Shown here: positions 25,101-53,300 of the stretch, piece after piece
Layout of the letters: every line of letters begins with the position of its first letter
How positions within the stretch are numbered: the first letter of the stretch is position 1
Assembly: GCF_001194135.2 (NCBI RefSeq)
Contig: NC_069002.1
Location: 30,710,546 to 30,774,545 of the forward strand
Origin: Octopus bimaculoides
Lineage: Eukaryota
Reading direction: 5' to 3'
DNA length: 64,000 nucleotides
Notes under the pieces: generated by a model
What the model saw: only the letters and a program-made list of their open reading frames with translations
Told to the model about the DNA's origin: nothing
Database searches by the model: none
Made by a program: the position numbers and the translations under genes

Positions 25101-27819
25101 AACCGTATTGTGGTGAGGAAAAGATACTAGGTTATCAACAAATAGTAAATTATTTTTTTCAAATATGGGAGACAACTCCTGTCCTCTTTCAGTCTTATTA
25201 GACCTCCTCAATGAAACAAATTTCACTGTATTTGGTGAAGTATCACTGATGAGAAATGGTTGAATATTCTGAAGGGAACTGTTTCACCAATGCAACAGAT
25301 ATGTTGAGAAATCACCCTATGACTTTCTATTGCAATCGTGTAGTGTGCAATGGACATATTTAGACATGTGTCAGTGGTGTATCATATAACAATCTGGACA
25401 TTTGTCAACTGGTATACAAAGTGACAGTCTTGACATGCCAGTTGTGTACAATGTGACAGATTTGACATTTATCATCCAATTTTGTTTTTTAAAATAGTCC
25501 CTTTAAGAGGGCTGGAAACCTTTGTAATTCTAAGTAAGACTATGAAGCCCTTAATAGTCTGTTAAAATATATATGATAAAAGAACCCCACTGAACACAAA
25601 ATCTTCTGTTGCTACGACTACAGCCACATCAATCTTGAAATTTTCTATTCCTACATTTACAGTTTCCAAGAATGAATACAGCACCATTTCCTTTTGTCAT
25701 CTGATAATTTCTATTAAAGGGAGACAATTCCATGTTGTCTGAACTATTTAGTGGAAAATGGATTTTGCTGAAATATTTGAATTATGGAAATTTAATATTT
25801 TGTAAAAAATAAAATATATTTCCCTGCAATACAACAAAGAAAAAAAATTTTATTAGAAAATATACTACAAAGAAATTTAAGGGATTCTTAAAAATTGAAG
25901 CCAGATTAGAGTTGAGATATGAGATAAGTGTGACTGTGAATAAAGTTGAATGCAATGTTAGTGTTTCTCAGTCAGTATCAATCTTTACTCAATGTTTTTG
26001 TCAGTCATTATCACTCTTCACCGAATGTGTTTGTCAGTCAGTATCACTCTTTACTCAATGTTTTTGTCAGTCATTATCACTCTTCACCGAATGTGTTTGT
26101 CAGTCAGTATCACTCTTTACTCAATGTTTTTGTCAGTCATTATCACTCTTCACCGAATGTGTTTGTCAGTCAGTATCACTCTTTACTCAATGTTTTTGTC
26201 AGTCATTATCACTCTTCACCGAATGTTTGTCAGTCATTATCACTCTTCACTGAATGTGTTTGTCAGTCATTATCACTCTTCACCGAATGCATTTGTCAGT
26301 CATTATCACTCTTCACCGAATGTGTTTGTCAGTCGTTATCACTCTTCACTCAATGTGTTTGTCAGTCATTATCACTCTTCACCGAATGTGTTTGTCAGTC
26401 AGCATCACTCTTTACGCAATGTTTTTGTCAGTCAGCATCACTCTTCACCGAATGTGTTTGTCAGTCAGCATCACTCTTCACCGAATGTGTTTGTCAGTCA
26501 GCATCACTCTTCACTGTTTGTCAGTCTATATCAATCTTTTATGTCATTCTTCAGTCAATATGTTTGTCAGTCTTTTATATCACACGTCAATCCATCACAA
26601 TTTGCTTGTCAAATATTCTGTTGTCTTTTCTTTTTCTATTCTAAATTCTTCATTTTGCATTTTTGAAATGTATGAAATGTTTCATGAAACTCTTTTAATG
26701 GAATTGTGGCGCCATCTTCACATCTTACCTTCTTCACTCATTATGCACTTTTCTTCTGTTATGTCTCTTTTCACCTTCTGTTGCACTCGTGGCAAACAAA
26801 AGAAATTGTTGTTGTTATTATTATTATTATTATTATTATTTAAGGCAGTAAGCTGGCAGAATCGTTAGCACGCCAGGCGAAATGCTTAGTGGTATTTTGT
26901 CTGCAGCTATACTCTGAGTTCAAATTCCATCAAGGTTGACCTTGCCTTTCATCCTTTCGGGACTGATAAATTAGATACCAGTAAAATACTGAGGTTGATG
27001 CAATTGACTACCCCCTCCCCCAAAATTGCTGCCCTTGTGGCAAAATTTCAAAGCTGGCAGAATCGTTAGCATGCCAGGTGAAATCCTTAGCAGTATTTTA
27101 TCTGTTGCNNNNNNNNNNNNNNNNNNNNNNNNNNNNNNNNNNNNNNNNNNNNNNNNNNNNNNNNNNNNNNNNNNNNNNNNNNNNNNNNNNNNNNNNNNNN
27201 NNNNNNNNNNNNNNNNNNNNNNNNNNNNNNNNNNNNNNNNNNNNNNNNNNNNNNNNNNNNNNNNNNNNNNNNNNNNNNNNNNNNNNNNNNNNNNNNNNNN
27301 NNNNNNNNNNNNNNNNNNNNNNNNNNNNNNNNNNNNNNNNNNNNNNNNNNNNNNNNNNNNNNNNNNNNNNNNNNNNNNNNNNNNNNNNNNNNNNNNNNNN
27401 NNNNNNNNNNNNNNNNNNNNNNNNNNNNNNNNNNNNNNNNNNNNNNNNNNNNNNNNNNNNNNNNNNNNNNNNNNNNNNNNNNNNNNNNNNNNNNNNNNNN
27501 NNNNNNNNNNNNNNNNNNNNNNNNNNNNNNNNNNNNNNNNNNNNNNNNNNNNNNNNNNNNNNNNNNNNNNNNNNNNNNNNNNNNNNNNNNNNNNNNNNNN
27601 NNNNNNNNNNNNNNNNNNNNNNNNNNNNNNNNNNNNNNNNNNNNNNNNNNNNNNNNNNNNNNNNNNNNNNNNNNNNNNNNNNNNNNNNNNNNNNNNNNNN
27701 NNNNNNNNNNNNNNNNNNNNNNNNNNNNNNNNNNNNNNNNNNNNNNNNNNNNNNNNNNNNNNNNNNNNNNNNNNNNNNNNNNNNNNNNNNNNNNNNNNNN
27801 NNNNNNNNNNNNNNNNNNN

Positions 27820-31321: not shown

Positions 31322-34300
31322 TNNNNNNNNNNTCTCTCTCTCTCTCTCTCTCTCGGCAGGTTTTGTGCAGTTTCCACCTATCAAACTCACTCACAGGGCA
31401 TTGGTCAGCCTAGGGCTATACTAGAAGACACCTCTCCCAAGGTACTGCTTGAAGTGGTAATTGAACTCAAAACCATTTGGTTGCCAAATGAACCACCACA
31501 ACCATCTTAAACAACCTGAATAACAAAATTGACCTCAGCAAGATTTGAACTCAGAGTGTAGGGATCTAGCACAAAACACCACAAGTCATTGTATCCATTC
31601 TAAACACTTTACCATTTCACCCCACATCTAATAATGTTCTGGGACCCCGAAATGGTCTCACCATTAACTTTACCATTTTTAACTGATTCCAAAGAATATA
31701 TGTTCTGTTTATTTATTTATTTAGAAATAATTGAAAAGATTTTTGTCTTTGCATTTTTTTTTGTTTTTGAAGGTCTGCAAATACCAATTTGATTCTTTGT
31801 TCTGAGATTTTTATTTTATATTTGATTTTATTCTTTACTTCTGTAACTTTTCCCTCCCTCCCTTGTTTCTTCAGCTCTTTCAACACCAACTGGCAGCTAA
31901 ACATTCCTTGTACTATTCCACTACAAGACTTGGCCGTAATCTTAAAGACCGCTGCACAAAAAGCGACCAAGATCGAGATATTCTTCAAGCAATGTTGGAC
32001 CAACTGAAAAACAAGTGGAACCTTGTTCGATCTGTTGTCTCTAAAAGGTAAGACATTTAAAAAAGCTGTCATAAGACCTGTCATATGATGTGTCATAATA
32101 CCATTTTATTTGGTCTTAAGTATCTAGTACATTATTCACTTGGTGTTTTCTTTTACAGGTTTTTTTTTCATGTGACAACCCATAGCCTATTATTGCTGTC
32201 TTTCCTTAGTTATTGTTAGCTGATTGCTTGCAACCTCATCATCATCATCATCATCGTTTAACGTCCGCTTTCCATGCTAGCATGGGTTGGACGATTTGAC
32301 TGAGGACTGGTGAAACCGGATGGCAACACCAGGCTCCAGTCTGATTTGGCAGAGTTTCTACAGCTGGATGCCCTTCCTAACGCCAACCACTCAGAGAGTG
32401 TAGTGGGTGCTTTTATGTGNNNNNNNNNNNNNNNNNNNNNNNNNNNNNNNNNNNNNNNNNNNNNGTGTCACCCGCACGAAAACGGCCACGCTCGAAATGG
32501 TGTCTTTTATGTGCCACCCGCACAAGCCAGTCCAGGGGCACTGGCAATGATCTCGCTCGAAAATCCTACGGGAGCCAGTCAGGCGGTACTGGCAACGGCC
32601 ACGCTCAAAATGGTGCATCTCATGTGCCACCCGCACAAGAACCAGTCCAGGGACCCATTGTTACATAGAATGTAGCCCTTATACAATAGCCTGTAGCCGA
32701 GACAATTTATTGTTGGTAGTCCATAGCCTATTGTTAGTTGATAGCTTGTAAATTCAAGCTATTGCTAACTTGTAGCCTGCAGGAGTGGAAATAGCCATGA
32801 CCCCTATTAATGCTGTCTACCCGCCTATCTGTACCATGAAGCAGAGAAATACTTACTTGAGAGGAAGCAGTGGGCTGATCCAAAGATTGAAACATACAGA
32901 CCGCCTGACCCAACACCTGTTCCTATAGGACATTGACTAGTTTTATTTCAGCCCATCACCACCACCACATTTCCATGACATGTCCAAATATGGTATTGTC
33001 CAAAATGAAGAGTTTTTTTTTTCCATCTTTATAGTTAAAGCAAGAGATTGTATCAGTTACATGGTGTTACTCCAGGAGCAAAAGATACATAGTAATTAAC
33101 AAATTACCGATACAGTATCACTAGATGACCATTAGAAAGAACATCTAAGTATCAATATACTAGATGACTGTTAGGTTATTTAACTACCAATATATTGCCA
33201 CTAGATGACTGCCAGAGAGGACTTCAACAACCAATATAGTGCTACCTAGACTAATTGATTAGGTTTCCAATAATCTTCAATATTATATTGACAATATCTG
33301 TTTAGATTTACTCTCTAATTTCATAACCTTGATGATAAATTAATTGGTTTCTCTCAGAAACGTGTTGTACATATTTCTTGTTATCATTTCCACGATTCTC
33401 ATTACCATTTCCATATTTCTTTTGTTCCATTTCTTCAATTGAAATCTGCGACAGCTTTATACAATTAAGATCCTTTTCTCAATTAATTTATCCGTCGTTA
33501 GTAATTAAACCGCCTTTCATGTTGTCATAAACACACTCGAAATTACTTTGAGACGGCAATTTAATGCAGATCGGAACTGTATATGAAACGACGGCTGTTT
33601 AAGACTGGTTCACACAATATGTTATGAATATTTATAAACAAGCTGACAAGAACAGCAACAGCAACAAACCTGTGAAGCAAAGCTTTGAGCAAAACAAAAC
33701 CTAGATTGTATATTGTTAGTACATATTGTTGTTATATTGTATATATATGTTATTTACAGCATTGTGCTTTGTAACAAAGTATGTGTGCGTGAGAGAGAGT
33801 GCTGCTCGTTATTGAGTATATAGATGAATGAAATGATTAGGATATTTTCAATGGAATATATTTCTCTGTTAATGTGTTTGATTCTTGATAAACCAGTCCC
33901 GTAATCTATAACGTTGTGGAATTTTTGTGAGCAGATAGTTTAACACTGAGATGACTCCGTGTAGTCAGATGGGAAAACTGCAGGAAAAAAAAAAAATGAA
34001 CAGAAATGTTAGAAAAGTGTTAAGCAATGAGAATCTTTTGATGGGAAGGTGTATGGTGTAGTGGTTACGATGTCGATCTCGCAGTTCGTGGGTTCAATTC
34101 TCAGATCGGACATTGTGTTCTCGAGCAAGGTACTTCATTTCACATTGCCTCTGTAAGCTCAGCTGAAAATGAGTAACTGTGGCATCTGAGGATGGGGGTG
34201 GAGAGCAGGAGGGGGTTAATTCTATGACAGACTGGTGCCCTATACACGGGCGGTGGTGGTGGAGTTTTAGACTTTTGATCTAGATTCCTTGTAATCTGAA

Positions 34301-34519: not shown

Positions 34520-35034
34520 ATATCTATGTGTGTGTGTAACTGCAGTTCAGCAAAAGATATCGATAGATTAAGTACCAGACTTATAATATAAGTTCAGGGG
34601 TCAATTTGTTCAAATTAAAGCTTGAAGCAGAAAATAAACAATTACTGAGCTGAAGCCAGAATAAACCCCATCATTTTTGATGGGTACTGCACCAGTAGAG
34701 AGAAAGAGAGAGAGAGAGGGGGGCGGAATTGAGCTAAAAAGCTTTGGACAGCCTTGTAAGGGGGTTCAACCATGTATTTATGGAGTGTGTTGGCGGTAGG
34801 TTGGTTACTGCAATCTGTCTCCCACCTAATTTGTGGGTTACGTGTGCTGCGCAGGAATTTTCTTTCCTCCTTTCAAAACTAAATATGAAATGAATGTGTG
34901 TGGGAGGGAGAGGAGAGAACCACATTGCAGAGAGAAATATTTTAAATATCAAGGACTTTGAAAGCTTTCATTAGCACAGTCTTTTCCACAACAACTTCGT
35001 TGTATTCTCTCTCTCACACCTCTCTCTCTCTCAC

Positions 35035-35071: not shown

Positions 35072-38000
35072 TCACACACACACACACACACAGAGCGACA
35101 TTTCTATATAAACTAGTTTAGCTAGATTTTACAAGCTGACAGACAAGATCTGTCCAACTTGATGTTTAATATCATCAAGTTGTTTACTTTCTATTTAATC
35201 AAAGCAGAAAAGAAAAAAAAAAGAAAGTGAAAAAAAGAAAAAACAGTCATAATGACACAGCTTGCCAAATATGGTAGTACTTTACATACTGGCCAATATG
35301 TGTGATGACTGACAAATGCGGGCTGTTTCTTTCTCCTGTCCTCNNNNNNNNNNCACTCTATCTACCTCTTCTATGACCCGTCCTTCTTTTGTTCAACCTG
35401 TTACTCCGTTCAATGGAAAGATACCTGTTATTACGAGTCCCTTACTAGAGATAGATAGATAAATAGATAGATAGAGAGGCTCTACGCAGTTGCTTCACCT
35501 GTTAGACATAGCAGTCAAATTACCTGCAATCTCAGTATTTTTTTTATTATTATTAAGATAAAAGAGGTATTGTACATAACGTAGTCTTTGATATACTCCC
35601 TAAAAAAATGGGATGGTTACAGCTGGAACGCCTTTAATCAATGGTCAACTTTATCAGGACTAAATTGGTGATAAACAACAAAAGGCTGGCTATTTGTTTA
35701 GCTTGCTAAACAGCATGAACTTTTTGGTACACTAACTCGTCTTAGCTGGACAGGTTAGTGTGAGTGAAAGATCGCAGTGAGTGAGTGAGTGAGTGACGTT
35801 TCTACATTGCTTTACCTGTGATTGTATGTTAAGGTGTAAGAGGGCGGTAAGGTAGTAGACGTCGCTGGAGGAGAAGACACCGCCGCCGCCACCATCATCA
35901 CCATCGCCACATAGTTGCCGCTTTAAATAATCTCTCTCTTTCTCTCGGGGAAAAAAGTTATGGATGACGGCAATTACCCTACCAGCACTTCTGCAGATTA
36001 CGAATTCCTCGTTTGGCCGAATGTCGACACAAGTTATAGGTAAAGATAAAAAAAAAAAAATACACATACACACGGGTAAAAACAATCAAACAATGGCTTT
36101 TAATAATTAGTAGCAATTAATTATAACGAGAAGGCACTAATATGAAACTTTCTTTTAATCTTTTTTGATTACTAATTTCCGTTTATTAAATTGTTTTGGT
36201 TCGCATTCCCCCCTCTCTCTCTCTCTCACTCTCTCACACACACTTTTTACTGTTACGGAAGTTTTTTTTTAATTTTAAATCTATTTATCGATGTTTTATT
36301 TTTTAAAATATTAACTGTTCTTTAAAGTAACATCTGGTTTATATATATATAAAAACTTTAAATTAAATATGAATTAAAATCTCAAGCAAAAACGAGGAAA
36401 CGTCCTGGAAACTTTCGACGTTCGCTTTTTAATTAAACAAGGTCATTGTTTTATACTTCCTAAATATTTATTTAATTTAATAAATATATATCCTTAATTA
36501 CATCAGTGTAATTAAACAATCTCGGCTTTCACAGAGTTTCTCAATAAACTTTGGTTCCTACCTGAGTTTAACAACCTCTCAGACTCACGTTAAAACGACC
36601 ACAGGTGAATCTCCATATATATACAATGCCTATATTTCTTAATGCTTTTATTTTCTTATCTTCCAAATATTTTCTAATCCTTATTTTAGCCCGCGTAATA
36701 CTAATTGATCGGGCGTAAATAAATATTTCTCCTGAACTTTTTCGTTGTAAAAACACTAAAATGGCGATGTCATTTTTGTCAATACAGGTGACCCGTTTCT
36801 CATTAACAGGTGTAACAACTCTTCAGCTTTTTCTCTAGCACTATTGGAATTTCTGCTTAATTTAGCTCTACTAACCTGTTGTTATTTCTTCATAAAGCAT
36901 CTCCGGTTATATAATACTTGTTTATATATATATATATATATATATAATCTTAAAAGAATAGTGTTTCGTTGTTTTAACTATAGTTGTTGTTGTTTAACCC
37001 CAGGTCAGTCCTAAACAAGTAAATCTACTATTAAAGGCATTCCACTCGTGACTGTCCGGTTTCCTTTTCAGGCATAGTTCATCTAGGACTACTTTATTCA
37101 GTGTGTCCTTTCTTATTTATTCTCAGCTCAATCTGATCAATCAGGTCTATGATTGAAGGCGTTCCACCTGTGGCATTTCCGTATTTTCTCCCCCCCCCCC
37201 CACCATCGCATAATATATCCAATACCACATCCAGTGTCCTGTTGTTTAACCCTTTAGTCAACACTGACCAACACACAGACACACACATAGAGCTATCATT
37301 AAGGACAGTTCGTCTGTGACCATCGTGTCTCTTCCATGGTCAGAACTACATTTTCAAACGTATTCTTCTATAAATCTTTTCAAAGGCGGTAGAATATAAG
37401 GAGATTTTGTTGCTATTTCTAGGAAGCCAGAGGACTTAATAGTAGTTCACCCTGTCATTTCAGTGAAAACTCATTGTCAGTGTGGGTGTGTGTTGACATT
37501 CCACCAAACAGTACTTGTATGACAATAAACTAAAACTTAACACACCTCATCAATCAGTTTAACAACTCACAAACTATTATCAGGTTACATTACCTTCCTA
37601 TTTCTCTCTGATCAGTGGCTGACATTCAGTACAGAGCAGTTTCACTAACTTTCTACCTGAGTACCTGGGTCTTCCTTCGGACTATTTCTATTGCCACCAT
37701 ACACACACACACACACACACACGGCTGTCACTTTGTTTAAAAAAAAACTCTTTAATGTTGTTATTGTTTATCTTGGCTGCTAGAAATGTTTAACTTCCGA
37801 TTACCTGAACATGTACCTGAACTACAACTGCTACACGCATGCGACAAGCACTCTCTCTCAAACACACTCAAACCTTGACAAATATAGAGGGTAGTTTGTC
37901 AGGGTATTCAGTACCCTGGCCCAGCCCTGTTCTCTTTTCCCCTCTCCCTATACTGTACACCCTCTTTCATTCCTACTACAGGTAGCCGCTTCTCTGTTCC

Positions 38001-41000
38001 TACACCGTGTGCTATTTTCTCCAAGTTACATACTGTATATCTCCTCAAATTCCTATTATATGTCTCCCTTTTTTCTGACCCTCTAATGTGCTCGTTCTTA
38101 TTTCATCCCTACAATGCATCCCCACTTCTCTGGGCCATTAACGTGCTCAGTCTTTTTTCATCCCTACAGAATGTATACCTTCTTCTCCAAATTCTACATT
38201 GTGTGACCCTTTCTCGCATTCCCACAATGCCCCTCACACCTCCCAGTCCTGTAATGTAAACCCTTCAGCTCCATAATATGCTCTCCTTTCCCCAACCTTG
38301 CAACTGAAAGAAGCCCTTCACATATATACATATATATATATATATATGCATGTCTCTGTGTGTCTGTAATTGACCCCATCACCTCTTAACAACTGTTGTT
38401 GGTGTGTTTACATCCCTGGAACTTAGTGGTTCGGTAAAAAGAGATCGATAGAATAAGAACTGGGCTTAAAAAAGAAATCTCTTCTTTATTCAGTTCTGTA
38501 GCGTGTACCCCCTTTCTACGTCTTTCCAGCCATCACTCCTTTTTACTGCAGCTGAAAAATACAATTGAAGAATCGCAGTTATTATAAAGTATATCACAGA
38601 CTAAATCAGTTATTTGTCAAAATTTGAAATGTTTTGGGTGAAATAATGTGAAATGTCATAACAGCCCACAATTCTCTCCTCTCCCGCCCTTCCTCTTTCT
38701 CAATTCTCAGAACAATCTCATCTGTTGTCTTTATTACACTGTGTGACACGATTTCTGTCCTTGGGTTGCGACTGTTATTTCCAATTTGCTGACCCCTAGA
38801 AAGTATGAAAAAATGGCTAATATTTCTTTCAGACTTTGCTTTTGATCTGATATTTATTCAAACCCCAAAGAATCCTTCTCAACACATGGCTATGATGCTC
38901 CTCCGCTACCCCTGCTCATGATCAGGTGGTTACGGTCAAACAACTGATAAGCAAATCTGTGGTTTTGAGCAAGAATATTTACGATAACAACATTTCTGAA
39001 ATGTAATGGAAAATGGGTCAGTTTCAAAACCTTGATGTCCAGGTCCCAAAAGCACAGTTTGAAGGGAATTGTTGTCATTTCCTTTGATTTCTAGATAGAA
39101 ACAAATAGGAAATAACACTCACTGACCAAAAACAAAAACTAAAACAAAAATTTGGTAACAGTGTTATTTAAATTGCTTAGGATTTAACTGGTGCCTATAG
39201 ATTTTGGTGCCCCTAGATTTTGGTGCCCCACAGGCATAACATACAAACACAAACATACAATGTATTTGTATATATGTTTTTATACGTCTGAATAGATATA
39301 TGTATGTATGTGTGTATTTCTTTTATATGTTTCAATCATTTGACTGGCCATGCTGGAACTCCACCTTGAAGGGTTTTAGTCGAACAAATCGACTCCGAGA
39401 TTTTTTTTTAAGCCCAGTTCTTATTCTGTTGGTTTCTTTTTACTGTACCACTAAGTTACAGGGATCTAAACACACCAACAACAGTTGTTAAGCGGTGATG
39501 GGGGTTAATTACAGACACACAGACACATACATATATATATATATCTATATATATGTGAAGGGCTTCTTTCAGTTTCTGTCTGCCAGATCTACTCATCAAG
39601 TTTTGGTTGGCCTGAAGCTATAATAGAAGATGCCCTAGGTACCACGTAGTGGGACTGAACCCATAACCATGTGGTTGGGAAGCAAGCTTCTTATCACACA
39701 GCCATGCCTGCGCATATATATATATTCTTTTATTAATGTTTCAGTCATTTGAGCCATGCTGGAGCACTGCCTTTAGTTGAAGAAATTGACCCCAGGACTT
39801 ATTCTTTGTAAGCTTAGTACTTATTCTATCGGTCTCTTTTGCTGAACCGCTAAGTTATGGGGACATAAACACACCCACATCAGTTTTCAAGTGATGGTGA
39901 GGGGACAAACACGGACACACACACACACACACACATATATATGTATATGTACACATGACGGGCTTCTTTCAGTTTCCGTCTACCAAATCCACTCAAATGC
40001 TCTGGTTGGTCCAGAGCTATGATAGAAGACAGTTGCTTTTAAGGTCCTACACAGTGGGACTTGACCCCAAAGCAGCATGGTTTGTAAAGTGAACTTCTTA
40101 AGCAACACAGTCATGCCTTCAGAATATTTCATTTTTAGATTTGGCTTGGAAAAATTCTTGACATGAACTTGTGTGTTGAAAGAAAATTTGTTGTATCTTG
40201 GGAGGGTCATTATGCCAAAATAAACACACACACAGACTGATTCAGTTTCACTTCTTTATCATTAGTCAATTGATTAGTTATTTAACCAACCAAGAAATCA
40301 AAAGGACTTTGACAGACAACTGATTGTTTGACTGATTAAGCATTCAACCAATTCATTAGTTGGTTAAATAACTGACCAATTGACTTAGAATTAGGTCGTG
40401 AAATTGAACCAGTGCTGTGTTTATTATTGGTGTAATCGACTTTCTCAAGATATATTAAAATAAGCTTATATCTCAAATTACAGGAAGAGTAAAATAATAT
40501 GGCTGGAGAGAGAGCAGAGATTTGTGTGTTTTCGAGTGAAGGCCTTCTTCAAGGTTGAGATAACTGGGTCGCGTAGGACATGACAAGTGTTCAATCTTTT
40601 GTTTTGAGTGACTGGTTGTAGCTGATCGGGAATAACATAAAACGATTCTCAGGAAGAATTTTGTCTGAAACATTCTCTACAGCAATATCACTTTACTGTT
40701 TCTCTCATTTTTATCAAATAACACAAGTCTTGCCGACATTGGCCACTAGTGAACTTCTTGGAGTTTGTTTTCTACATAGATGTATGTGTGTGGAGGCGCA
40801 ATAGTCCAGTGGTTAGGGCAGTGGACTTGCGGTTTCGATTACCAGACCGGGCATTGTGAGTGTTTATTGAGCGAAAACACCTAAAGCTCCACGAGGCTCC
40901 GGCAAGGGATGGTGGCGAACCCTGCTGTACTCTTTCACCACAACTTTCTCTCACTCTTACTTCCTGTTTCTGTTGTGCCTGTAATTCAAAAGGGTCAGCC

Positions 41001-41537
41001 TTGTCACGCTGAATATCCCCGAGAACTACGTTAAGGGTACACGTGCCTGTGGAGTGCTCAGCCACTTGCACATTAATTTCACGAGCAGACTGTTCCGTTG
41101 ATCGGATCAACTGGAACCCTCGACGTCGTAAGCGATGGAGTGCCAACAACAACAGATGTATGTGCGTAATACAAACAGGGTCTGATGAAGATTGTGATTA
41201 ATCTGCAATTTACAAAACTTATCTAGTGAAGTTTGTGGTGACAAGAGAGTCCTCGATGTTTCTTCATTTGAGGAAGAAAACTTCTCTTCTTCCTTTTTCT
41301 TTTCCCTTTCTGTTTCTTGTAACTTTTCACCTCTCTTTTCCTCTCACCAATTCACATCAGCCTTTCACTTCTTGTTGTCTTAACATTCATCTCCTTCCAA
41401 CAATTTGAAGTCGAGCAATTCTGTCAATCAATCAATCTTTCTCTCTCTCTCTTTGATCTTTAATTACTTGTTTCAGGTTTGAAAATTTCTCTTCACTTTT
41501 TTTACTCTTATGCTCTCCCTTCCTTACTTTCCTTTCT

Positions 41538-41586
<49 letters not shown>

Positions 41587-42493
41587 CATGTGTATATATA
41601 TATATACCGGAGTAAGCACATAAAATGTGCAACAAGGTGGAAAAAAGAGTACTCAAATACCAGAGGTAGAGTAATATGCTTTATTTAAAAGCAGCAGAAA
41701 TATAACAAAAAGACTGTTACTCAGAGTTTCACGTTCCTGTTCGGGAACGTGAAACTCAGAGTAACAGTATTTTGTCATATTTCTGCTGCTTTTAAATAAA
41801 GTATATATATGTGTGTGTGTGTGTATATATATCATCATTATTTCATGTCGGCTTTTCATGTTGGCATGGGTTATGTGTGTGTGTGTGCATTTGGTTGGGA
41901 AGCAAACTTCTTGATTATAGAAACATGCCTTTGGCACCCCCTGCCCCTCCACACACACTTGGTGTCGTGTGGTCCTTCATGTTATCCCAAAACATTAAGT
42001 ATTCCTTCACCAGAAAGATTTAATTGGGTTTTAAAATGGTTGCTGTTTTTTAATGTGTATCCTTCGCATTTTATATGTTGTGGAATATGCAATCTATCTA
42101 CATGTTATGTATGAATGTTTATTACATGTTATGTATGAATGTTTATTACATGTTAGTGTGTGTGTGTGTGTATATACGTTTGTGTGTGTATATAGTTGAA
42201 ATTTATAGAAAAACAAAAGACGAAGACAGGTGTATGAACAACAAGCATGTGTGTTAGTTTGATGCTCTGGAAAAATGGAAAAGCCTTTTACGTTTTTGCC
42301 TACGCTCTTTGATAGGAAAGAATGACAGTAAATAAACAGAGAAGGGAAAAAAACGTAGTGATATACATACACAGGGTGTCCACAAAGTCTGGGTACATGG
42401 GGATTAACATACGTTAAGAAATTATTATTTCTTATATTTAATTGTTTACGTTATGATTTTATTTACTCCATGTACCCAGACTTTGTGGACACC

Positions 42494-42573
<80 letters not shown>

Positions 42574-43899
42574 TGGCTACTGAATAATTGTCATATTATT
42601 TACAGATATATATATATATATATCCATACAAACATGTATATTTATATATGCAAGTTTTTGTGTGTGTATATAAGGGATTGGCTATAAGCTTCTCCACATG
42701 CTAGAAATAGATGCTTATAGCCAATCCCTTGTTATAATTATGAATATAATTATTATATTTGTTGTGTGTATGTGTATAATATTGTCAAGCGACGGTGGAG
42801 GGACAAACACACACACACACATATATATATATATATGTATGTATATATATTATGTGTATGTGTATGATCTGTATGTATGTTGCTGTGTGTGTGTACATGT
42901 ATTACGTTATCTGTCTGTGTGTGTGTCATAGGAATGTGACCTGTATGCATATATTGTGTGTGTGTGTGTGTGAATCTAATAAAACAATTGCTCTCAAACC
43001 CTGGCAGACATCAGTTTCCTCCCTTCCCTCCCTTTTATAAGTGGTGAGAGATTCCTGTGTGATGACAGATGATATTTTTGAATATATGGAGAGAGAGAGA
43101 GAAAGAAACAGGTGCTAATCCATAAAGTGCTGTTTTTACTTATAATATTCAACAAAGCAGTGAGTTGGCAGAATTGACAAAGAAACACCTTATGGTAGTT
43201 TTTTCTGATTCTTTACTCTGAGTTCCGAGGTCAACTTAGCCTTATAGTCGTTTCCCTATCCCCACCACATCCCTCCCCAGGGCTGATACAATAAAGTACC
43301 ACTCAAGTACTGGGGTGGGAGGGTTGATGGCATCACCTGAACCCTGCCCCTTCCTTCTTAGAATTTCTGGTCCTGGACCTAAATCAAAAACAACTATGAA
43401 TAAGGTACAAAAGTGGCTGTGTGGTAAGAAGCTTACTTGCCAACCACATGGTTCCAGGTTCAGTCCCACTGCATAGCACCTTGGGCAAGTATCTTCTACT
43501 ATAGCCTTGGGCCGACCAAAGCCTTGTGAGTGGATTTGGTAGATGGAAACTGAAAGAAGCCTGTTGTATATATGTATACACACACACACACACACATCTG
43601 TATGTCTTTGTGCCTATATTTGTCCCCCACCACTGCTTGACAACTGGTGCTGATGTTATGTCCTTGTAACTTAGCAGTTTGGCAAAACAGACTGATAGAA
43701 TAAGTGCCAAGCTTTGAAAAAAAAAGTCATACATATAAGGTGCAGGAGTGGCTGTGTGGTAAATAGCTTGCTTCCCAACCACATGGTTCTAGGTTCAGTC
43801 TCACAGCATGGCACCTTGGGCAAGTGTCTTCTACTATAGCCTCGAACCGACCAAAGCCTTGTGAGTGGATTTGGTAGACAGAAACTGAAAGAAGCCTGT

Positions 43900-43945
<46 letters not shown>

Positions 43946-45117
43946 TGTGTGTTTGTCTCTCCACTATTGCTTGACAACCAATGTTGGCGTGTTTACATCC
44001 CTGTAACTTAGCAGTTCTGCAAAAGAGACCGATAGAACAAGTACTGGAGTTGATTTGTTCGACTAAACTAAAGGTGGTGCTCCAGCATGGCCACAGTCAA
44101 ATGACTGAAACAAACAAAAAAAACATCTGATTAAAAATTCTTGAAAGTGATGTCCCAGCATGGCCACAATCTAATGACTGAAACAAGTAAAAGATAAAAG
44201 ATGGGCAAGACTTGAACTTGGAACCTCGAAAGCTTTAGTCCAGATTTATTCAATTATTTCTTGGTAGAAGGCTACAAATGTATGGAGAGAGGGAGAGAGA
44301 GAGAGAGAGAGAATGTGGTGGTGGTGGTGGTGGTGGGACATAGTCCCTTATATCAACCTTAGTACTTGACTGGTATTATATTTTATGAATCTTGAACAGA
44401 ATTAAGGACAAGTCAACCCGGGTGAGGTTTAAATTTGGATTGGAAAGCGATCAGAATTCCTAATATTGCTCTCGATTTCTCGCTGCTTTATTAACATTCT
44501 AGACAGACATTCATTAACACAACGAATGTCTAATGAATTGCAGACCAAAATTAATCAATTCCTGCTTCCTTCAGTTGAAATTTATTTTAAAATTACATTT
44601 TAAACTATATTAGGTCCTTCAAGTGTTATTGGTGGATGTATACAGGTGTGGCTGTATGGTAAGAAGCTCGTTTCCCAACCACATGGTTCTGGGTTCAGTC
44701 CCATTGTGTGGCACCTTGAGCAAGTGCCTTTTACTATAGCCTTGGGCCAACCAGAGCCTTGTGAGTGGATTTGGTAAACGGAAACTGAAAGAAGCTTGTC
44801 ATATATATGTATAAAAATCTATTTGTGTCTGTATCTGTCCCCCATCACATCTTGACAACCGGTGTTGGTGTGTTTATGTCCCTGTAACTTAACAGTTCAG
44901 CAAGACAGTCCCTGGGGTTGATTTGCTTGACTAAACCCTTCAAGGCTGTGAACCTGTATGACCACAGTCAAATGACTGAAACAAAATATGAAAGATATAC
45001 ACATACATACATAGATAGAAAAAATAGCAAACACCAGAAGAGAAATTGTGTTGTTATACAATTATTTTGCTGAGTTGGTGATCAGTAATATACTGTTTGA
45101 TGGTATAAGTGTAATGT

Positions 45118-45152
<35 letters not shown>

Positions 45153-47049
45153 GAATGTGTGCACACTTACATGCAGACGTGTATGTGGTGATTTGCTGTA
45201 CTTGAGAAGACATGTCAAACTAAGCAAAATCGCTGTCTTCCACACAAACAGGCTTGTCCTTTACAGGTGATGGTGCCATTTAAAAAGCATCCATGCAGGT
45301 GGCTGCTGTGTCAATGCACCTATGCTGGAACTGCATTAATGCACTCATGTCAGTGCTGCATAAATGCACCTGTGATGGTGATATGTAAAAGGCACCCAGC
45401 ACACACTCTGTAAAGTGGTTTGTGTTATGGAGGGCATCCAGCTGTAGAAACCATGCCGCAACTGACAGATGGAGTCTGGACAGCTCCCTTATTTCTTTAT
45501 TGCCCACAAGGGGCTTAACATAGAGGGGACAGACAAAGGGGTTAAGTCGATTGCATCGACCCCAGTGTGTAACTGGTACTTAATTTATCGACCCCCGAAA
45601 GGATGAAAGGCAAAGTTGACCTTGGCGGAATTTGAACTCAGAATGTAACGACAGATGAAATACCACTAAGCATTTCGCCCGGCGTCCCTAACGTTTCTGC
45701 CAGCTCGCTGCCTTACCCAGCCCCATATCAAACTGTCCAACACATCCCAGTATAGAGATGATGGTGTGTGTGTATTTGCATGCTATTTCTATTAATATAT
45801 TGTCTTTTTAGTTTATCATTTTAAAGGAAAACTGTTTAAAAGTTGAAAATTAACAATTGTGACATATCTTAATGAAATATTTGCTCTACTGACTCGGTTA
45901 ACAGGTGAACAATATAAAGCAATACAAATGTGTGCAATACCTTAAAAAACAGTTAACAGGTGAACAAAACCTTGCTATTACAGTTAATTTGTTCTTTAAT
46001 AAACATGGTTAACAAGTGAACTATACCTTAATAAACATATTTAGCATGTGAACAATGTTTGAATAAATGTGGTTAACATATGAACAGTGCTTCGATAAAC
46101 ACAATTAACGTGTGCACAATACCTTAATAAACACAGCTAGCAGGAAAATGATACTTTAATAAATGTGGTTTACAGGTGAACAAAACGTTTCTCACTCTGT
46201 TAACAGGTGAATGAAACCAAACAATTTGTCCTGTTTGTTTCTAGTTGATTTATTAATTTATTTCCTTTGGTTAATTAATATCGAAGTTCTTCTTGTACTA
46301 ATTACCCAAATTTAGTGACAGTTTAATCAAGCTTAATATCATCTCTCCCCCACCACCATTTACATTACTGCTATTTACCCAGCAGAGATAGATTGAGTTG
46401 TTATGGTAACAAATGGGGGATATTCATCAAGAGATTAGTTGAATAAATAATAACGAGAGCTTATAATTAAAGCTTTGCTTGATGTGTAGACTTGTATGGC
46501 AGGTCAGAAACTTGGGGGTGGTGGGGAATGAAATATGTTTACTTTCATGTGATGTTGTTGTTGTTGCTATTGTAAAGCCTCAGGTGATCCCAGATGGAAT
46601 AGATCTATGGCCTGTAAATAAGACCTACATCTGATCTGTTTGTTGTTCCAAATATATCACAGCCTTTGTTTAGCCGAAGACCATTCTGCACTGAATGGTA
46701 TGTAGTTGTAATGGCTGTGTGGTTAGGAAGTTTGCTTCACAACCATGAGGTCTCGAGTTCAATCTCACTGTGTGGTATTATGGACCTTGGGCAAGTGACA
46801 TCTGCTGTAGTGTTGGGTTGACCAAAGCCTTGCGAGTGAATCTGGTGGATGGAAACTTGTAAGACGCCTGTTGTGTGTGTGTGTGTATCATCATCATCAC
46901 CATTTAATGTCCATCTTCCATGAATGCATGAGTAGAATGGTTGACAGGAGCCCCGACCATGCAGAAAATGTACCCTAGGCTAGTGTCTGTTTTTTGTAGG
47001 GATTTTATGGCTGGATGCCCTTCCTAACACCAACCACTCCCCAGATACA

Positions 47050-47148
<99 letters not shown>

Positions 47149-50100
47149 TTGTGTGTGTGTGTGTATATATTCCAATAACACTGTACTTATTCAATGTCCT
47201 CGCGTTGTTGTCTTTTCATGTTTTTTCTTGCTTGCTCATGTTTGGATTGACTATATATATATACATGTGTGTGTCTATGTATATATACACGTGTGCATGT
47301 ATATATGTATACATACACACACAAAAATTGGTGCAGATTGGAGACAGGAAGAGCATCCAGCTGTAAAACCCTACCCCAAGATCAATTCCCATCCAAGCCA
47401 TGCTAGCATGGGAAAAACCTGTGCTGGTGCCTTGTCAGAAGCACCCAGTACACTCTTTAAAAATGTTTGACATCAGGAAGGGCATCCAGCTGTAGAAACC
47501 CGACTAAAACAGGCAATTGGACCCTGGTGCAACTCTCTGGCTGTTCAGCTCCTGTCAAACCATCCAACCCATGCCAGCATGAAAGATGGACATTAAACGA
47601 TGATGATGATAAACCAACTAGTAAATGGTTGTATATTTTTGTTACACAGCCATAATATTCTGGAACAAACTGTGATGCGTTTTAAAAGAACTACAAGACT
47701 GTAGTCTGGTTGATACCAAACCACACAGCACTGTCAACAATTTGTTGCAGCAATACAGTCGAGGCGGGATTAAAAGACAATTGATTCTCTATGTGTCACC
47801 CAACCCTGCCCTCCCCCTCTCTTGTGACCTTGACAGTGTCGAAATGACAATAAAGATATGAGTGTTGTTTGTGAAATGATTGATTAACAATTCAATTTTC
47901 TTCCAGATCAGACCCCCCCTACCTCATCCACCTAGGCTTGATTTCATCACTGTATTGACCCTTTCGGTACCGACCTGTCTGAGACTGACCCTGGTTCTAT
48001 GATATAAGTTTCCCTGCACCCTCAACACAATTCTAAGCCGGAATCAGAGTGATTGGCATCATGTGACGACCTTAGGCCTTTTCATTTAACCCTTTTGGCA
48101 CCAACCTACCTGAGACTGCTCCCTCCCCCCCTTGGTTCCATGATATGAGCTTCTTGTTTTAAAGCGATCTAAATTTAAACCTTCCATCAAATTTTCATGT
48201 TAATCTGTGTTTCAAACCCCGGCTTCCATAATGAGATTATTTCACTAAAGTCTTCATTATTTTCAGATTTAAATGAAACACAGTAAGTGTATCATAACAG
48301 GAATATGGTAACAAAAGGGTTAAAGTAATCCAAATTAAAACCTTTCATCATTAACTTATGTTCCAAGCATGGAGGCGCAATGGCCCATTGGTTAGGGCAG
48401 CGGACTCGCGGTCATAGGATTGCNNNNNNNNNNNNNNNNNNNNNNNNNNNNNNNNNNNNNNNNAGGATTGCGGTTTCGATTCCCAGACCGGGCGTTGTGA
48501 GTGTTTATTGAGCGAAAACACCTAAACGCTCCACAAGGCTCCGGCAGGTGATGGTGGCAAACCCTGCTATACTCTTCCACCACAACTTTCTCTCACTCTT
48601 ACTTCCTGTTTCTGTTGTGCCTGTAATTCAAAGGGTCAGCCTTGCCACATTCTGTGTCACGCTGAATATTCCTGAGAACTACGTTAAGGGTACACGTGTC
48701 TGTGGAGTGCTCAGCCACTTGCATGTTAATCTCACGAGCAGGCTGTTCCATTGATCGGATAAACTGGAACCCTCGACGTCGTAAGCGATGGAGTGCCAAC
48801 AACATGTTCCAAGCAGTAGCTTGATAATGACAGGTATTTTAATAAATTCTTTGTTGTTTTCAAAATTAATTGAAACAAAAGCAGTTTATAAATTAACTGT
48901 TAGTGATGGTAGCAGCCTTTGTAACAAATATTAACTTGCACATCCAACTTCATATGGATGTGCTGTCTTGAACACCAAAGACTGCAGTAATCCACCTTAG
49001 AAACCACCTTGTAAAGAGCTAAATAGCACAGATTATATTTGCAGAAGAAATTTTACCAGCATCAGCGTAATTTTTGCCTCATCAGCAGCAGATACCCAAT
49101 CACGAAATGTCAGACTGAAATCTCTTGAAGCCAATATAGTTTAACACTGACTAAACAAAACTGGCAGACTGTGTATAAATTAGCTATTAGCGACAGAAGT
49201 ATCATTTGTAATGAATATTAATTAGAACATCTGACTTAACTTGGATGTGTGGTTTCCAACATTGTAGACTGCAGTAATCATCTTGAGAAATCGTCTCGAA
49301 GAGAAGGTGCTGACAAAATTTCGTCAACCGATATATCTGTGCTTTTAATAGCATCTAATGTCTTTGCATAATGATTTCTCGAAACTATTACTGTAGTCTA
49401 CAGCATTCAAAATAGCACATCCAAGTTAAATTGGATGTGTTAATTAATAAAAACTGTGCATTTCAGCAGAAATATGGTAACAAGAAAGTTAAATATAATC
49501 TTCTGGGATTCCTAAACTAAGCACTATTCTATCTTTTATTCATCATTTTCCATTCCATGCTGTACCACTCCTCTCTCCCTCCAAGACAATTCTTGTAACA
49601 AATAAGTGGTTTTTGTTTTTTTTTTCTTTCTATGAAACGAAATGGATAAGAATAACTTGATTAATCTCTAACTTGATGAAGAATCAATCGCATTTATGAA
49701 CCAAGAATAACTCTGTTTGACTACTCAAAAATAATGAATTATCAATGGATTTGGTTTACCATTGGGTGTGTGTGTATAAATATATATATATATATATAAA
49801 TGAGGCTAATTGTGTGAATTTGTATATGGTATGTGTGTGAAGCACCAAAGGATGTGTGTATATGAAGGTATTTCTTTGTATACACATATGGTGTATGGGT
49901 TGGATTCTGGCACCGATGACTATATGTATCTGAGGGTATTTGTGTGTGTGTGTAATATATAGGCATTTTTGTGTCCATATATGGTGTGTTGGTGGGAGTT
50001 TGATCACAATAGATACCTGGACATGTGGCTATGTGTGTGTGTATATATATATATATGTAGTGTATGGGTGTTTGTTTAGAAGTCAGTGAGTTATTTGAGT

Positions 50101-50286: not shown

Positions 50287-50319
<33 letters not shown>

Positions 50320-53300
50320 GTATATATATGTGTGTGTGTGTCTGTGTCTGTGTTTGTCGCCCCACCATCGCTTGACAACCGATGCTCAGGTGTTTACGTC
50401 CCCGTAACTTAGCGGTTCGGCAAAAGAGACTGATAGAATAAGTACTAGGCTTACAAAGAATAAGTCGTCGTGTCGATTTGCTCGACTAAAGGCGGTGCTC
50501 CAGCATGGCCACAGTCAAATGACCGAAACAAGTAAAAAAGACTTATGATGAAAGACAATCTAGCCATGGCCATTGTTGTTGTTTTTTTTTTTTCATATGT
50601 GATGGGAACCCAGGAACACATAAATCCCAATGTGTTCTTTTTTAAGACAGCAGGGCAAGATATGAGAAAAAATTGGCTGCTATTTCTAGCAGGTTCAATA
50701 ACTATAAAGAGGTTCCATCTCCGTGATTACTGGCCTGTCATTTGTGTGTATATGTGGTGGGTGGGGGTGGTAATAATAATTACTCAGACATTTCTCACTA
50801 CATCAGACCCTCTCCCTCTCTCTCTCTCTCTCTCTGTCTATATATATCTTCAACTATAAATATTACATCGTTGGGAGATCTAGCTAAATATATCTTCCAC
50901 ATTGATTAAATGGCCACAACTGAGGAAACTTTATACCTTCTGGTCAGCTGAGTTAATTTATTTCTCAGCCAAATTACTAAGCACTTTTCTTAATATCCAT
51001 CATCATCATTGTCATCGTCATCATCATTGTCATTTAATGCCCACTTTTTTATGCTCATGTGGGTCAGACTGAATTTGTTGAGGCAGATTTTCTATAGTTG
51101 GATGCCCGTCGTTGTTGCCAACCAAGGTACTGTTTCCCCATGGAAGACTGGAAATGAACAACCCCTCTTGTATGACAGTGATGCTCGTTTACAACCATTG
51201 TATGACGTCAAGACAAGGGTTCACACAAACATGCATTCATTTGTATGTTGGGCTTCTTTCAGTTCCCATCTACTCGCAATAGTTTGGTTGGTTAGGGGTT
51301 TTAGTTGAATGCCCTTGCCCCCAAATGCCACCCAGTGGAGCTGATTGGATTGCACCCAGTTCTTATCTTTTAAACCTGGTACTTATTCTGTTGGGGTCCC
51401 TTTTGTAGAGCCATTCAGTTGTAGAGTACTTGGGGACTTCACTGGTGCTGGTNNNNNNNNNNNNNNNNNNNNNNNNNNNNNNNNNNNNNNNNNNNNNNNN
51501 NNNNNNNNNNNNNNNNNNNNNNNNNNNNNNNNNNNNNNNNNNNNNNNNNNNNNNNNNNNNNNNNNNNNNNNNNNNNNNNNNNNNNNNNNNNNNNNNNNNN
51601 NNNNNNNNNNNNNNNNNNNNNNNNNNNNNNNNNNNNNNNNNNNNNNNNNNNNNNNNNNNNNNNNNNNNNNNNNNNNNNNNNNNNNNNNNNNNNNNNNNNN
51701 NNNNNNNNNNNNNNNNNNNNNNNNNNNNNNNNNNNNNNNNNNNNNNNNNNNNNNNNNNNNNNNNNNNNNNNNNNNNNNNNNNNNNNNNNNNNNNNNNNNN
51801 NNNNNNNNNNNNNNNNNNNNNNNNNNNNNNNNNNNNNNNNNNNNNNNNNNNNNNNNNNNNNNNNNNNNNNNNNNNNNNNNNNNNNNNNNNNNNNNNNNNN
51901 NNNNNNNNNNNNNNNNNNNNNNNNNNNNNNNNNNNNNNNNNNNNNNNNNNNNNNNNNNNNNNNNNNNNNNNNNNNNNNNNNNNNNNNNNNNNNNNNNNNN
52001 NNNNNNNNNNNNNNNNNNNNNNNNNNNNNNNNNNNNNNNNNNNNNNNNNNNNNNNNNNNNNNNNNNNNNNNNNNNNNTTCTATTGGCACAGGGCTTGAAA
52101 CCTAAAAGAAGTGGGGCTAGTTGATTACATTGAACCCCAGTACTCAACTGGTACTTATTTTATCAACCTTGAAATGATAGAGACAAAGTCCATCTTGGCA
52201 GAATTTGAACTTAGGACGTAAAGCCAGAAGAAATGCTGTTGGTATGCTAAGAATTCTGCCGGTTCAAATATTGTCTAACATTGGCCCAAGGCCCTGATAT
52301 CAGGGAACTGGACATAAGACCAAAAACAAAATTCATTTTTCTAATGAGAAAGTTAATTAATTTTATTTTAGATTGTTTTGTTGATTTAAAGTGTAATTTA
52401 TATTTATTCTGATTTTTTTTTGTTCTTTATTTGTCCATTTTTAGCCAGAATAAACTTGATGAAGCCCTGCTGACATCTGGCCGTGTGTCCGATGCCTTGA
52501 ATTCACTGCAAGAATGGTTGAGTAAAGCAGAAGCAATGCTGTCTAAAGACGAATGTATACTTGGAGATTATGATACTGTAAATCTATTAATAGAACAACA
52601 CAAGGTTTGTTTATTTACTTCACATGTAATAGTTGTGACTCTGTAGTCACGAGTTCAAACCTTGCTATCACCATTGAACTGTGCCTCAGTATACAACCTG
52701 ATTATTATACTTCATTCTAGCAAATACGCTACCTTTACTTTCTAGAAAATTAGATAAAGGACCCCTGCTTGTAAAAACAACCCATATCAAGAATTCATTC
52801 TTTGGTTCACTTTTCCGTCTGTTTTTCCATGCTAGCATGGGTTAGATGAATACATGCATACAAGAGGTAGACCCTGGAAGACAAGGGATGAAGTGGTGAA
52901 GCATGATTTCTGGACGTTGGGCCTCGCAGAGGCGATGACAAGTGACTGAGACCTTTGGCGATATGCTGTGCTTGAGAAGACTTGCCAAGCCAAGGGAAAT
53001 TGTAGTCGTGGCCGATGCTAGTGACACATAAAAGCACCCATTACACTATGTAAAGTGTTTGGCATTAGGAAGGGCATCCAGCGAACAACTGATGAAGGGT
53101 CGTTCTTTATGTTGTTTGTCTTCAAACAAAATATCTCTTATTCTGTGTCTATGGCTTTGTTGACAAGGAAATTACAACAACCACTGGGCTACTGATGTTA
53201 ACATTTGTAACTCAGTGATTTTTTGTGGGGGACAAGTGAAAACCTCAACAGTTACTCAGACACAGATATTCGAAACCATAGTAGATCTGTATGTTGGACA

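What the first reader, a model, noticed from the sequence alone, without database searches (positions are those of the whole stretch)
35960..36039. Hidden alternative first exon in the 20-kb intron predicts a short C-terminal spectraplakin isoform
Seen: a gttATGG start, an in-frame TAA 12 codons upstream, 26 codons ([26 protein letters not shown]) plus AG, then a |gtaaag donor. Exon 10 also ends AG| (phase 2), so both splice to exon 11 to form AGC-CAG-AAT ([10 protein letters not shown]). No usable acceptor lies between the TAA and the ATG, so this is not a cassette exon. It sits in a CpG-enriched, TE-poor part of the longest intron. Known: internal promoters in long introns of rod-domain cytoskeletal genes give short C-terminal isoforms (dystrophin Dp71/Dp116/Dp140). 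Inference: the product would lack the actin-binding and plakin domains and most of the rod, keeping about 3 spectrin repeats, the EF-hands and presumably the microtubule-binding GAR/GSR tail beyond the window. It would be a microtubule-only or dominant-competitor form. I do not know of this isoform being described in molluscs.
Basis: partly seen in the sequence, partly recalled or inferred. Interest (0 to 1): 0.85.

Follow-up and report, generated by a model that had tools for sequence, protein, structure and literature searches.

The report
Chance intronic ORF on a CpG island
The proposed hidden first exon is in the sequence as described, but an ATG-ORF-donor pattern like it arises by chance several times in this intron, so nothing shows it is used; the more solid feature is the roughly 1-kb CpG-retaining, repeat-free island it sits on, which could be an intronic regulatory element or internal promoter.

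Summary
There is an ATG at 35960, an in-frame TAA at 35924, and 26 codons plus AG followed by a TAG|GTAAAG donor at 36040. The upstream exon (31875-32047) also ends AG in phase 2, and exon 11 starts at 52445, giving ...[12 protein letters not shown]. The host gene is a spectraplakin C-terminus: spectrin repeats, and EF-hands whose best PDB match is MACF1.

The configuration is not above chance. The same 20.4-kb intron holds 8 equal-or-better phase-2 ATG-ORF-donor sites, and dinucleotide shuffles give 4.0±2.0. The donor scores at the weak end of the gene's real donors. Codon usage falls below every real-exon window. No homologue of the peptide or the junction was found, but the searchable collections hold no cephalopod sequence, so neither transcription nor conservation could be tested.

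One thing is unusual. The site lies at the 5' edge of the strongest CpG-undepleted patch in the window (35750-36800; o/e 1.26 against 0.39 background; Poisson 2e-9), inside the longest stretch free of intra-window repeats. That fits a germline-unmethylated regulatory element or TSS, but does not prove one.

Verdict: observation confirmed; the isoform interpretation is unproven and more likely chance (about 10% real).

The parts
35960..36039 (+). Candidate ATG-initiated 80-nt segment (26 codons + AG) ending at a phase-2 GT. Most likely a chance intronic ORF.
   Evidence: sequence; 8 equivalent sites in the same intron, 4.0±2.0 in shuffles; codon LLR 0.89, against 11.5±4.3 for real exons.
36040..36045 (+). 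Donor-like site TAG|GTAAAG, lacking the +5 G and +6 T that most real donors of this gene have.
   Evidence: 1.2 bits, against -0.3 to 8.7 (median about 4) for 16 real donors; 68 sites of at least 1.2 bits in the intron (3.5 per kb).
35924..35926 (+). In-frame TAA upstream of the ATG. It lies inside a TTTAAATA stretch (TATA-like, 31-38 nt before the ATG).
35750..36800 (.). CpG-undepleted island: 37 CpG, o/e 1.26, TpG/CpA o/e 0.87. The dense core is 35841-36040 (14 CpG per 200 bp, 50% GC). Inferred to be germline-hypomethylated DNA, possibly a cis-regulatory element or an internal TSS.
   Evidence: Background o/e is 0.39 and TpG/CpA 1.29; Poisson P = 2e-9; it is the top-ranked 1-kb window of the 64 kb.
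35354..38301 (.). Longest stretch of the window with no interspersed repeat shared with the rest of the window (only microsatellites match).
31875..32047 (+).
52445..52604 (+). Exon 11 ((S)[14 protein letters not shown]...EQHK). The acceptor is tttttag|C. The exon and both of its boundaries appear to be conserved in distant animals.
35986..36039 (+). Alternative reading: a 54-nt in-frame cassette using the internal acceptor ccctaccag| at 35985. It would insert [18 protein letters not shown] between the two exons.
   Evidence: crude acceptor score 2.0, against 1.0-6.0 for real acceptors; the translation is in frame.

Best explanation
The 80-nt ATG...AG|GTAAAG segment is most likely a fortuitous open frame inside the 20-kb intron of a spectraplakin (MACF1/Shot-type) gene, and not a demonstrated first exon.

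What is distinctive at this spot is the DNA it sits on. This is a roughly 1-kb patch (35750-36800) that has kept its CpGs while the rest of the gene body has lost about 60% of them, and it is embedded in about 3 kb of unique, repeat-free sequence.

Shown: the CpG retention, the absence of the TpG/CpA excess that deamination leaves, the uniqueness within the window, and the absence of transposon, RNA-gene, mitochondrial or contaminant signatures.

Inferred: the patch is protected from germline methylation, as promoters and some regulatory elements are in Octopus bimaculoides genes with methylated bodies. It therefore probably acts as an intronic cis-regulatory element, possibly a TSS. Whether any transcript starts there, on which strand, and through which donor is not shown.
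For: Chance level. The same intron holds 8 distinct donors scoring at least as well as the candidate that close an ATG-ORF of 26 or more codons in phase 2, several of them with much stronger donors (34680-34795 GCG|GTAGGT at 4.4 bits; 50064-50143 GTG|GTAAGT at 5.7 bits). Dinucleotide shuffles give 4.0±2.0 such sites, or 0.57 with the Kozak criterion. One of 8 sites falling in a patch that is 5% of the intron has about a 35% chance (derived).

Donor. It scores 1.2 bits, in the lowest quarter of the 16 real donors, of which 12 have the +5 G and 13 the +6 T that it lacks.

Codon usage. The LLR is 0.89, below all 29 real-exon windows (minimum 3.6).

Homology. The peptide has no Pfam match and no homologue was found.

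Island. CpG o/e is 1.26 against 0.39, P = 2e-9; TpG/CpA is 0.87 against 1.29. The core ties for the highest CpG count per 200 bp, and most of the other top windows overlap interspersed repeats. There are no TIR, LTR or TSD, no Rfam match even at E<=1, no tRNA, no mitochondrial-code ORFs, and no plasmid or phage match.

Literature. O. bimaculoides has a large class of genes with methylated bodies but unmethylated TSS and promoter (PMC9476566).
Against: The candidate ATG would be the first ATG for any TSS between 35829 and 35959, and it has a purine at -3 and a G at +4. It coincides exactly with the CpG-dense core. The product would begin close to a spectrin-repeat boundary and retain folded repeats plus the EF-hands. 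GTAAA-type donors are used in this gene (53582 TTG|GTAAAT). An N-terminal leader peptide need not share spectrin-repeat codon usage, and the candidate scores above 89% of intronic pseudo-ORFs. All negative database searches are uninformative, because no cephalopod sequence is in the collections.
Confidence: 0.6

Rival explanations
1. An internal promoter in the island fires on the + strand just upstream of 35960. The 80-nt coding first exon splices from 36039 to 52445. The mRNA encodes a short protein (26 new residues, about 3 spectrin repeats, EF-hands, and presumably the GAR and C-tail beyond the window) that binds microtubules but not actin, analogous to dystrophin Dp71.
For: Frame, phase and junction are correct. 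It would be the first ATG, with a good Kozak context. It sits in the CpG-dense core of the only unique CpG island of the intron, and the island extends mainly downstream, as is usual around a + strand TSS (my knowledge). 36040 is the first donor-like site after the ATG. The downstream product contains Pfam spectrin repeats and MACF1-type EF-hands. An unmethylated TSS within a methylated gene body is documented in octopus.
Against: The pattern is expected by chance. The donor is weak and the codon usage is not exon-like. The TATA-like TTTAAATA sits only 31-38 nt before the ATG, which would leave almost no leader. No rod-less C-terminal spectraplakin isoform is described in the Shot, MACF1 or dystonin reviews. 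There is no transcript, TSS or conservation evidence of any kind.
Confidence: 0.1
2. The island is a real regulatory element or TSS, but the transcript is not the one proposed. It could be an enhancer or insulator for the full-length gene. It could be a promoter whose non-coding first exon uses another donor (for example 36605 CAG|GTGAAT or 37004 CAG|GTCAGT), with translation starting at a downstream Met. Or it could be an antisense or lncRNA promoter.
For: CpG retention and uniqueness are robust, while the specific ORF is at chance level. Stronger donors lie within or just after the island. Exon 11 contains an in-frame Met (…KAEAMLSK…).
Against: There is no positive evidence for any transcript. 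No Rfam family and no conserved ORF on either strand. CpG retention could also reflect a recent low-copy insertion, which a 64-kb window cannot exclude.
Confidence: 0.25
3. A 54-nt in-frame cassette exon (35986-36039) that uses the internal acceptor ccctaccag| and the same donor. It would insert 18 residues ([18 protein letters not shown]) at the linker between two spectrin repeats of the full-length protein.
For: The length is a multiple of 3 and the frame is open. The acceptor has C at -3 and a moderate pyrimidine tract, with a crude score of 2.0, within the real range of 1.0-6.0. Alternative splicing within the spectrin rod of spectraplakins is described.
Against: Such coincidences are common in 20 kb, both splice sites are weak, and no homologue carries an insertion here (one search shows the exon boundary is conserved, with nothing upstream of it).
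Confidence: 0.03

Closest known systems
Dystrophin Dp71, Dp116 and Dp140 (also utrophin and nesprin short isoforms): internal promoters in long introns with unique first exons
   Same: The proposed architecture is the same: a unique short coding first exon in a very long intron of a spectrin-superfamily rod gene, spliced in frame to the shared C-terminal exons, with a CpG-rich promoter-like setting. Dp71's promoter being CpG-rich and housekeeping-like is from my knowledge.
   Different: For Dp71 the TSS, the transcript and the protein are experimentally established and conserved. Here none of these is shown, and the ORF-donor pattern is at chance frequency.
Spectraplakin N-terminal isoform types (Shot A-D; MACF1a1-3, MACF1-4, MACF1c; dystonin 1/2/3 and e)
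   Same: They are generated by alternative promoters and first exons with unique leader peptides, and some lack the actin-binding domain.
   Different: All the described variants start at or near the 5' end and keep the whole spectrin rod. None of the reviewed isoforms starts about 3 repeats before the EF-hands.
Unmethylated TSS and promoter regions of gene-body-methylated genes in Octopus bimaculoides (methylation pattern 'MP2')
   Same: A local absence of the CpG depletion that marks methylated gene bodies (here; for the published pattern).
   Different: The published class concerns annotated 5' TSSs measured by bisulfite sequencing. Here hypomethylation is only inferred from CpG o/e, at an unannotated intronic site.

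Membership tests
Alternative first exon driven by an internal promoter | Transcription start mapped at or upstream of the exon (CAGE, 5'RACE, RNA-seq coverage edge) | not testable with these tools
   No expression data are available. The protein and contig collections returned nothing from this species for this locus.
Alternative first exon driven by an internal promoter | Splice junction from its donor to the shared downstream exon (36039^52445) | not testable with these tools
   A search with the junction peptide found only genomic exon-11 fragments of other animals.
Alternative first exon driven by an internal promoter | ATG-initiated open frame in phase with the downstream exon | tested here: met
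   phase 2, giving [36 protein letters not shown].
Alternative first exon driven by an internal promoter | The sequence signal (ORF + donor + Kozak) exceeds chance expectation | tested here: not met
   8 equivalent sites in the intron; shuffles give 4.0±2.0 (0.57 with Kozak; 44% of shuffles have at least one).
Alternative first exon driven by an internal promoter | Donor strength comparable to the gene's real donors | tested here: inconclusive
   1.2 bits on a generic PWM recalled from memory, against a real range of -0.3 to 8.7. Three of the 16 real donors score lower.
Alternative first exon driven by an internal promoter | Promoter-like chromatin or hypomethylation at the site | tested here: inconclusive
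   The CpG o/e proxy is strongly positive, but it is indirect and also fits an enhancer or a young insertion.
Alternative first exon driven by an internal promoter | Conservation of ATG, frame and donor in related species | not testable with these tools
   No cephalopod genomes are in the collections. The degenerate DNA pattern scan and the antisense-ORF search were both negative.
Spectraplakin (MACF1/dystonin/Shot), host gene | Spectrin-repeat rod followed by paired EF-hands of MACF1 type | tested here: met
   Pfam Spectrin 6e-49 and EF-hand_7 2e-9. The best PDB match is 5ve9, MACF1 EF-hands, 1e-29.
Spectraplakin (MACF1/dystonin/Shot), host gene | C-terminal GAR (Gas2-related) domain, and N-terminal CH and plakin domains | not testable with these tools
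   Both lie outside the 64-kb window.

The most novel reading that the evidence does not exclude
The CpG island marks a genuine internal promoter of an octopus spectraplakin gene, and the 35960-36039 exon gives a Dp71-like isoform with no rod and no actin-binding domain (about 3 spectrin repeats + EF-hands + GAR/C-tail). No such isoform class appears in the Shot, MACF1 and dystonin reviews read here.
Probability: 0.1. Interest if true: 0.65.

Novelty: not a real feature. Interest (0 to 1): 0.2.

Why it matters
If the exon were real, it would be the first C-terminal-only spectraplakin isoform. That would be a microtubule-binding module uncoupled from actin, and it would extend the dystrophin and nesprin internal-promoter logic to a third family of giant rod proteins.

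As it stands, the useful results are methodological and local. An in-frame ATG-ORF-GT in a long intron carries essentially no information. In this window the informative signal is the CpG-retaining unique island, which is a cheap and specific target for existing octopus methylome, ATAC and RNA-seq data.

Tried and rejected
(1) Annotated or transcript-derived proteins with the new N-terminus or junction. The 5.8-billion-protein search returned only genomic exon-11 fragments from other animals, at 75% identity or less. Exact look-ups of window ORFs found nothing on record. A homology search with the 117-aa antisense ORF that overlaps the exon, meant to pull out orthologous DNA, had no hits. A degenerate DNA pattern scan of metagenome contigs had none. 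All are uninformative because the collections lack cephalopods.

(2) Island as transposon. There are no intra-window copies beyond microsatellites, no TIR, LTR or TSD, and no similarity to the window's abundant SINE beyond a (CAT)n run. Rejected within the limits of a 64-kb window.

(3) Island as NUMT. There are no long ORFs under the invertebrate mitochondrial code and no mitochondrial rRNA or tRNA. Rejected.

(4) Island as small-RNA gene. No Rfam match at E<=1. Rejected for known families.

(5) Bacterial, phage or plasmid contamination. No blastn match. Rejected.

(6) Nested protein-coding gene on either strand. No Pfam hit for any long stop-free stretch, and a 117-aa stop-free stretch (the antisense ORF, with a TTG start and no ATG) is expected about twice by chance in the window (my calculation).

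(7) The bacterial promoter/terminator scanner was not used, because it does not apply to a eukaryote.

Full report
OBSERVATION

There is an ATG at 35960 in the context gttATGg, and an in-frame TAA at 35924, 12 codons upstream. The 26 codons read [26 protein letters not shown], followed by AG and then gtaaag at 36040.

I rebuilt the exon map of the + strand gene from stop-free stretches and splice-site scoring. Fourteen consecutive exons join into one uninterrupted 757-codon frame. Thirteen introns separate those fourteen exons, and twelve of them are phase 0. The exception is the 20.4-kb intron at 32048-52444. Its upstream exon (31875-32047) ends ...AAA AG|gtaaga, and its downstream exon starts tttttag|C CAG AAT. 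Both the real donor and the candidate donor therefore yield AGC-CAG-AAT, that is [10 protein letters not shown].

This intron is the longest in the window. The gene is a spectraplakin C-terminus. Pfam gives Spectrin at 6e-49 and paired EF-hands, and the EF-hand pair's best solved relative is the MACF1 EF-hand structure 5ve9 at 1e-29. Exon 11 and both its boundaries recur in genomic ORFs of distant animals, in the forms '...[F/Y/C][10 protein letters not shown]...EQHKV...'. The intron position, and probably its phase, therefore look ancient.

IS IT MORE THAN CHANCE?

No. I counted every ATG in the intron that opens a frame of 26 or more codons ending at a GT in phase 2, with a donor score at least equal to the candidate's. 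The candidate scores 1.2 bits on a generic metazoan donor matrix that I wrote from memory. The real intron contains 8 such donors (7 in the count, where the threshold fell just above the candidate's own score). Several are clearly stronger:
- 34680-34795, GCG|GTAGGT, 4.4 bits
- 50064-50143, GTG|GTAAGT, 5.7 bits
- 50545-50756, GTG|GTGGGT, 4.5 bits

Two hundred dinucleotide-preserving shuffles of the intron give 4.0±2.0 such sites, and 97.5% of shuffles have at least one. Even when a purine at -3 and a G at +4 are also required, 44% of shuffles have at least one. Donor-like sites of at least 1.2 bits occur 68 times in the intron, or 3.5 per kb.

The candidate donor TAG|GTAAAG sits in the lowest quarter of the 16 real donors of this gene (range -0.3 to 8.7). 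Twelve of those carry the +5 G and thirteen the +6 T that it lacks. One real donor, 53582 TTG|GTAAAT, is of the same GTAAA type.

I scored codon usage with a log-likelihood ratio (LLR) trained on 837 real codons against intronic trinucleotides. The candidate scores 0.89. That is below all 29 real-exon windows (mean 11.5, minimum 3.6), although it is above 89% of intronic ATG-ORFs, many of which are microsatellite-derived. The peptide has no Pfam match.

First, an AG does exist between the TAA and the ATG, at 35956-35957 after a (CT)n tract. Using it gives a TGA at 35965, so it cannot make a coding cassette.

Second, an acceptor inside the ORF (ccctaccag| at 35985) would give a 54-nt in-frame cassette reading [23 protein letters not shown]. 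A cassette exon is therefore not strictly excluded. It is just as unsupported as the first-exon reading.

WHAT IS DISTINCTIVE HERE

The window as a whole is strongly CpG-depleted (o/e 0.41) with a TpG/CpA excess (1.29). That is the signature of a methylated gene body. The exons themselves are at o/e 0.65.

The patch at 35750-36800 stands apart:
- It has 37 CpGs where 11.5 are expected at background depletion (Poisson 2e-9).
- Its CpG o/e is 1.26 and its TpG/CpA o/e is 0.87.
- It is the top-ranked 1-kb window of the 64 kb. The runner-up lies at about 5.9-7.0 kb, at o/e 0.92.

Its core (35841-36040; 14 CpG in 200 bp; 50% GC) ties for the densest CpG spot in the window. Most of the other top spots overlap sequence repeated elsewhere in the window. 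The island lies inside 35354-38301, the longest stretch of the window that shares no interspersed repeat with the rest.

I tested and rejected the trivial explanations:
- No terminal inverted or direct repeats, and no target-site duplication.
- No homology to the abundant SINE beyond a (CAT)n run.
- No RNA family even at E<=1, and no tRNA.
- No mitochondrial-code ORFs.
- No plasmid or phage similarity.
- No Pfam-recognisable ORF on either strand.

Published bisulfite data show that O. bimaculoides has thousands of genes with highly methylated bodies but an unmethylated TSS and promoter (PMC9476566). A CpG-retaining island within a depleted gene body is what a germline-unmethylated promoter or protected regulatory element would leave behind. 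That is an inference, not a measurement. A young low-copy insertion cannot be excluded from 64 kb alone.

DOES THE ISLAND RESCUE THE EXON?

Only partly. In its favour:
- The ATG would be the first one for any TSS between 35829 and 35959.
- It lies in the CpG core.
- 36040 is the first donor-like site after it.
- The product would begin close to a repeat boundary and keep folded spectrin repeats and the EF-hands.

Against it:
- With 8 chance candidates in the intron and an island covering about 5% of it, one candidate falling in the island has roughly a 35% chance.
- The only TATA-like element (TTTAAATA, 35922-35929) is too close to the ATG to leave a leader.
- Stronger donors lie further into and just beyond the island (36605, 36788, 37004).

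COMPARISON WITH KNOWN SYSTEMS

The model is a copy of the dystrophin Dp71/Dp116/Dp140 logic. That logic, and the similar internal promoters of nesprins and utrophin, are established knowledge that I cite from memory.

In spectraplakins, alternative promoters are well known, but all described ones act at the 5' end. These are Shot types A-D; MACF1a1-3, MACF1-4 and MACF1c; and dystonin 1/2/3 and e. All of them retain the whole spectrin rod (10.1101/122010; PMC4914211). I found no paper on cephalopod MACF1. A rod-less C-terminal isoform would therefore be new if real.

WHAT COULD NOT BE TESTED

Transcription, TSS position and cross-species conservation could not be tested. Every attempt to reach cephalopod sequence failed. 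The collections hold essentially prokaryote-style ORF calls and returned no near-identical match from this species, so these negatives carry no weight either way.

VERDICT

My estimates are:
- About 60%: a chance ORF on a real CpG island of unknown function.
- About 25%: the island is regulatory or a TSS, but with a different transcript.
- About 3%: the in-frame cassette.

Interest is low as it stands. The island is a cheap, well-defined target for existing octopus RNA-seq, bisulfite and ATAC data.

Noticed in passing
window 35750-36800 (core 35841-36040): The strongest CpG-undepleted patch of the whole 64-kb window (o/e 1.26 against 0.39; TpG/CpA 0.87 against 1.29). It is unique sequence and AT-rich downstream of 36040. 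It looks like a germline-hypomethylated island inside a methylated gene body.
   Followed up: yes
window 20560-20900: A second CpG-dense patch in sequence not repeated elsewhere in the window (19 CpG in 341 bp, 51% GC, o/e 0.87), 240-580 bp upstream of the exon at 21138-21275. It contains a 96-aa ORF with no Pfam match. It could be another regulatory island or a low-copy element.
   Followed up: partly
window 59262-59320 and 59639-59772: A small coding exon (cag|GAT CTT CAC..., [19 protein letters not shown]...) lies between the exons ending at 57983 and 59772. I could not reconcile its donor phase with the apparent acceptor tttgtgtttag|T AAT TGG at about 59639, so the exon structure of the last spectrin repeat is unresolved.
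   Followed up: partly
window 52445-52604 (exon 11): Both exon boundaries of this exon appear conserved in distant animals. Genomic ORFs from other species read ...[10 protein letters not shown]...EQHK then V (GT), showing the same boundaries. The phase-2 intron is the only non-phase-0 intron among the 13 I mapped between the 14 joined exons.
   Followed up: partly
window 35986-36039: The internal acceptor ccctaccag| at 35985 would turn the same donor into a 54-nt in-frame cassette exon.
   Followed up: yes
window 25900-26870: A long tandem minisatellite that is open in several frames (repeating ...[22 protein letters not shown]... for over 200 codons), inside the 10.6-kb intron.
   Followed up: no
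window 12-245, 40860-41200, 48512-48840: Three copies of one interspersed element (translation [27 protein letters not shown]...) that is CpG-dense. In addition there are many copies, on both strands, of a SINE-like repeat with a (CAT)n head. The window also has 11 assembly gaps (N runs of 10-711 nt), one of them at 35344-35353, about 400 bp upstream of the island.
   Followed up: partly
window 35732-36085 (- strand): A 117-aa stop-free ORF (TTG start, no ATG) antisense to the candidate exon, with a Gly/Asp-rich stretch from the (GCC)n/(CAT)n repeat. It has no Pfam hit, no homologue and no record in the collections. This length is expected about twice by chance in the window.
   Followed up: yes
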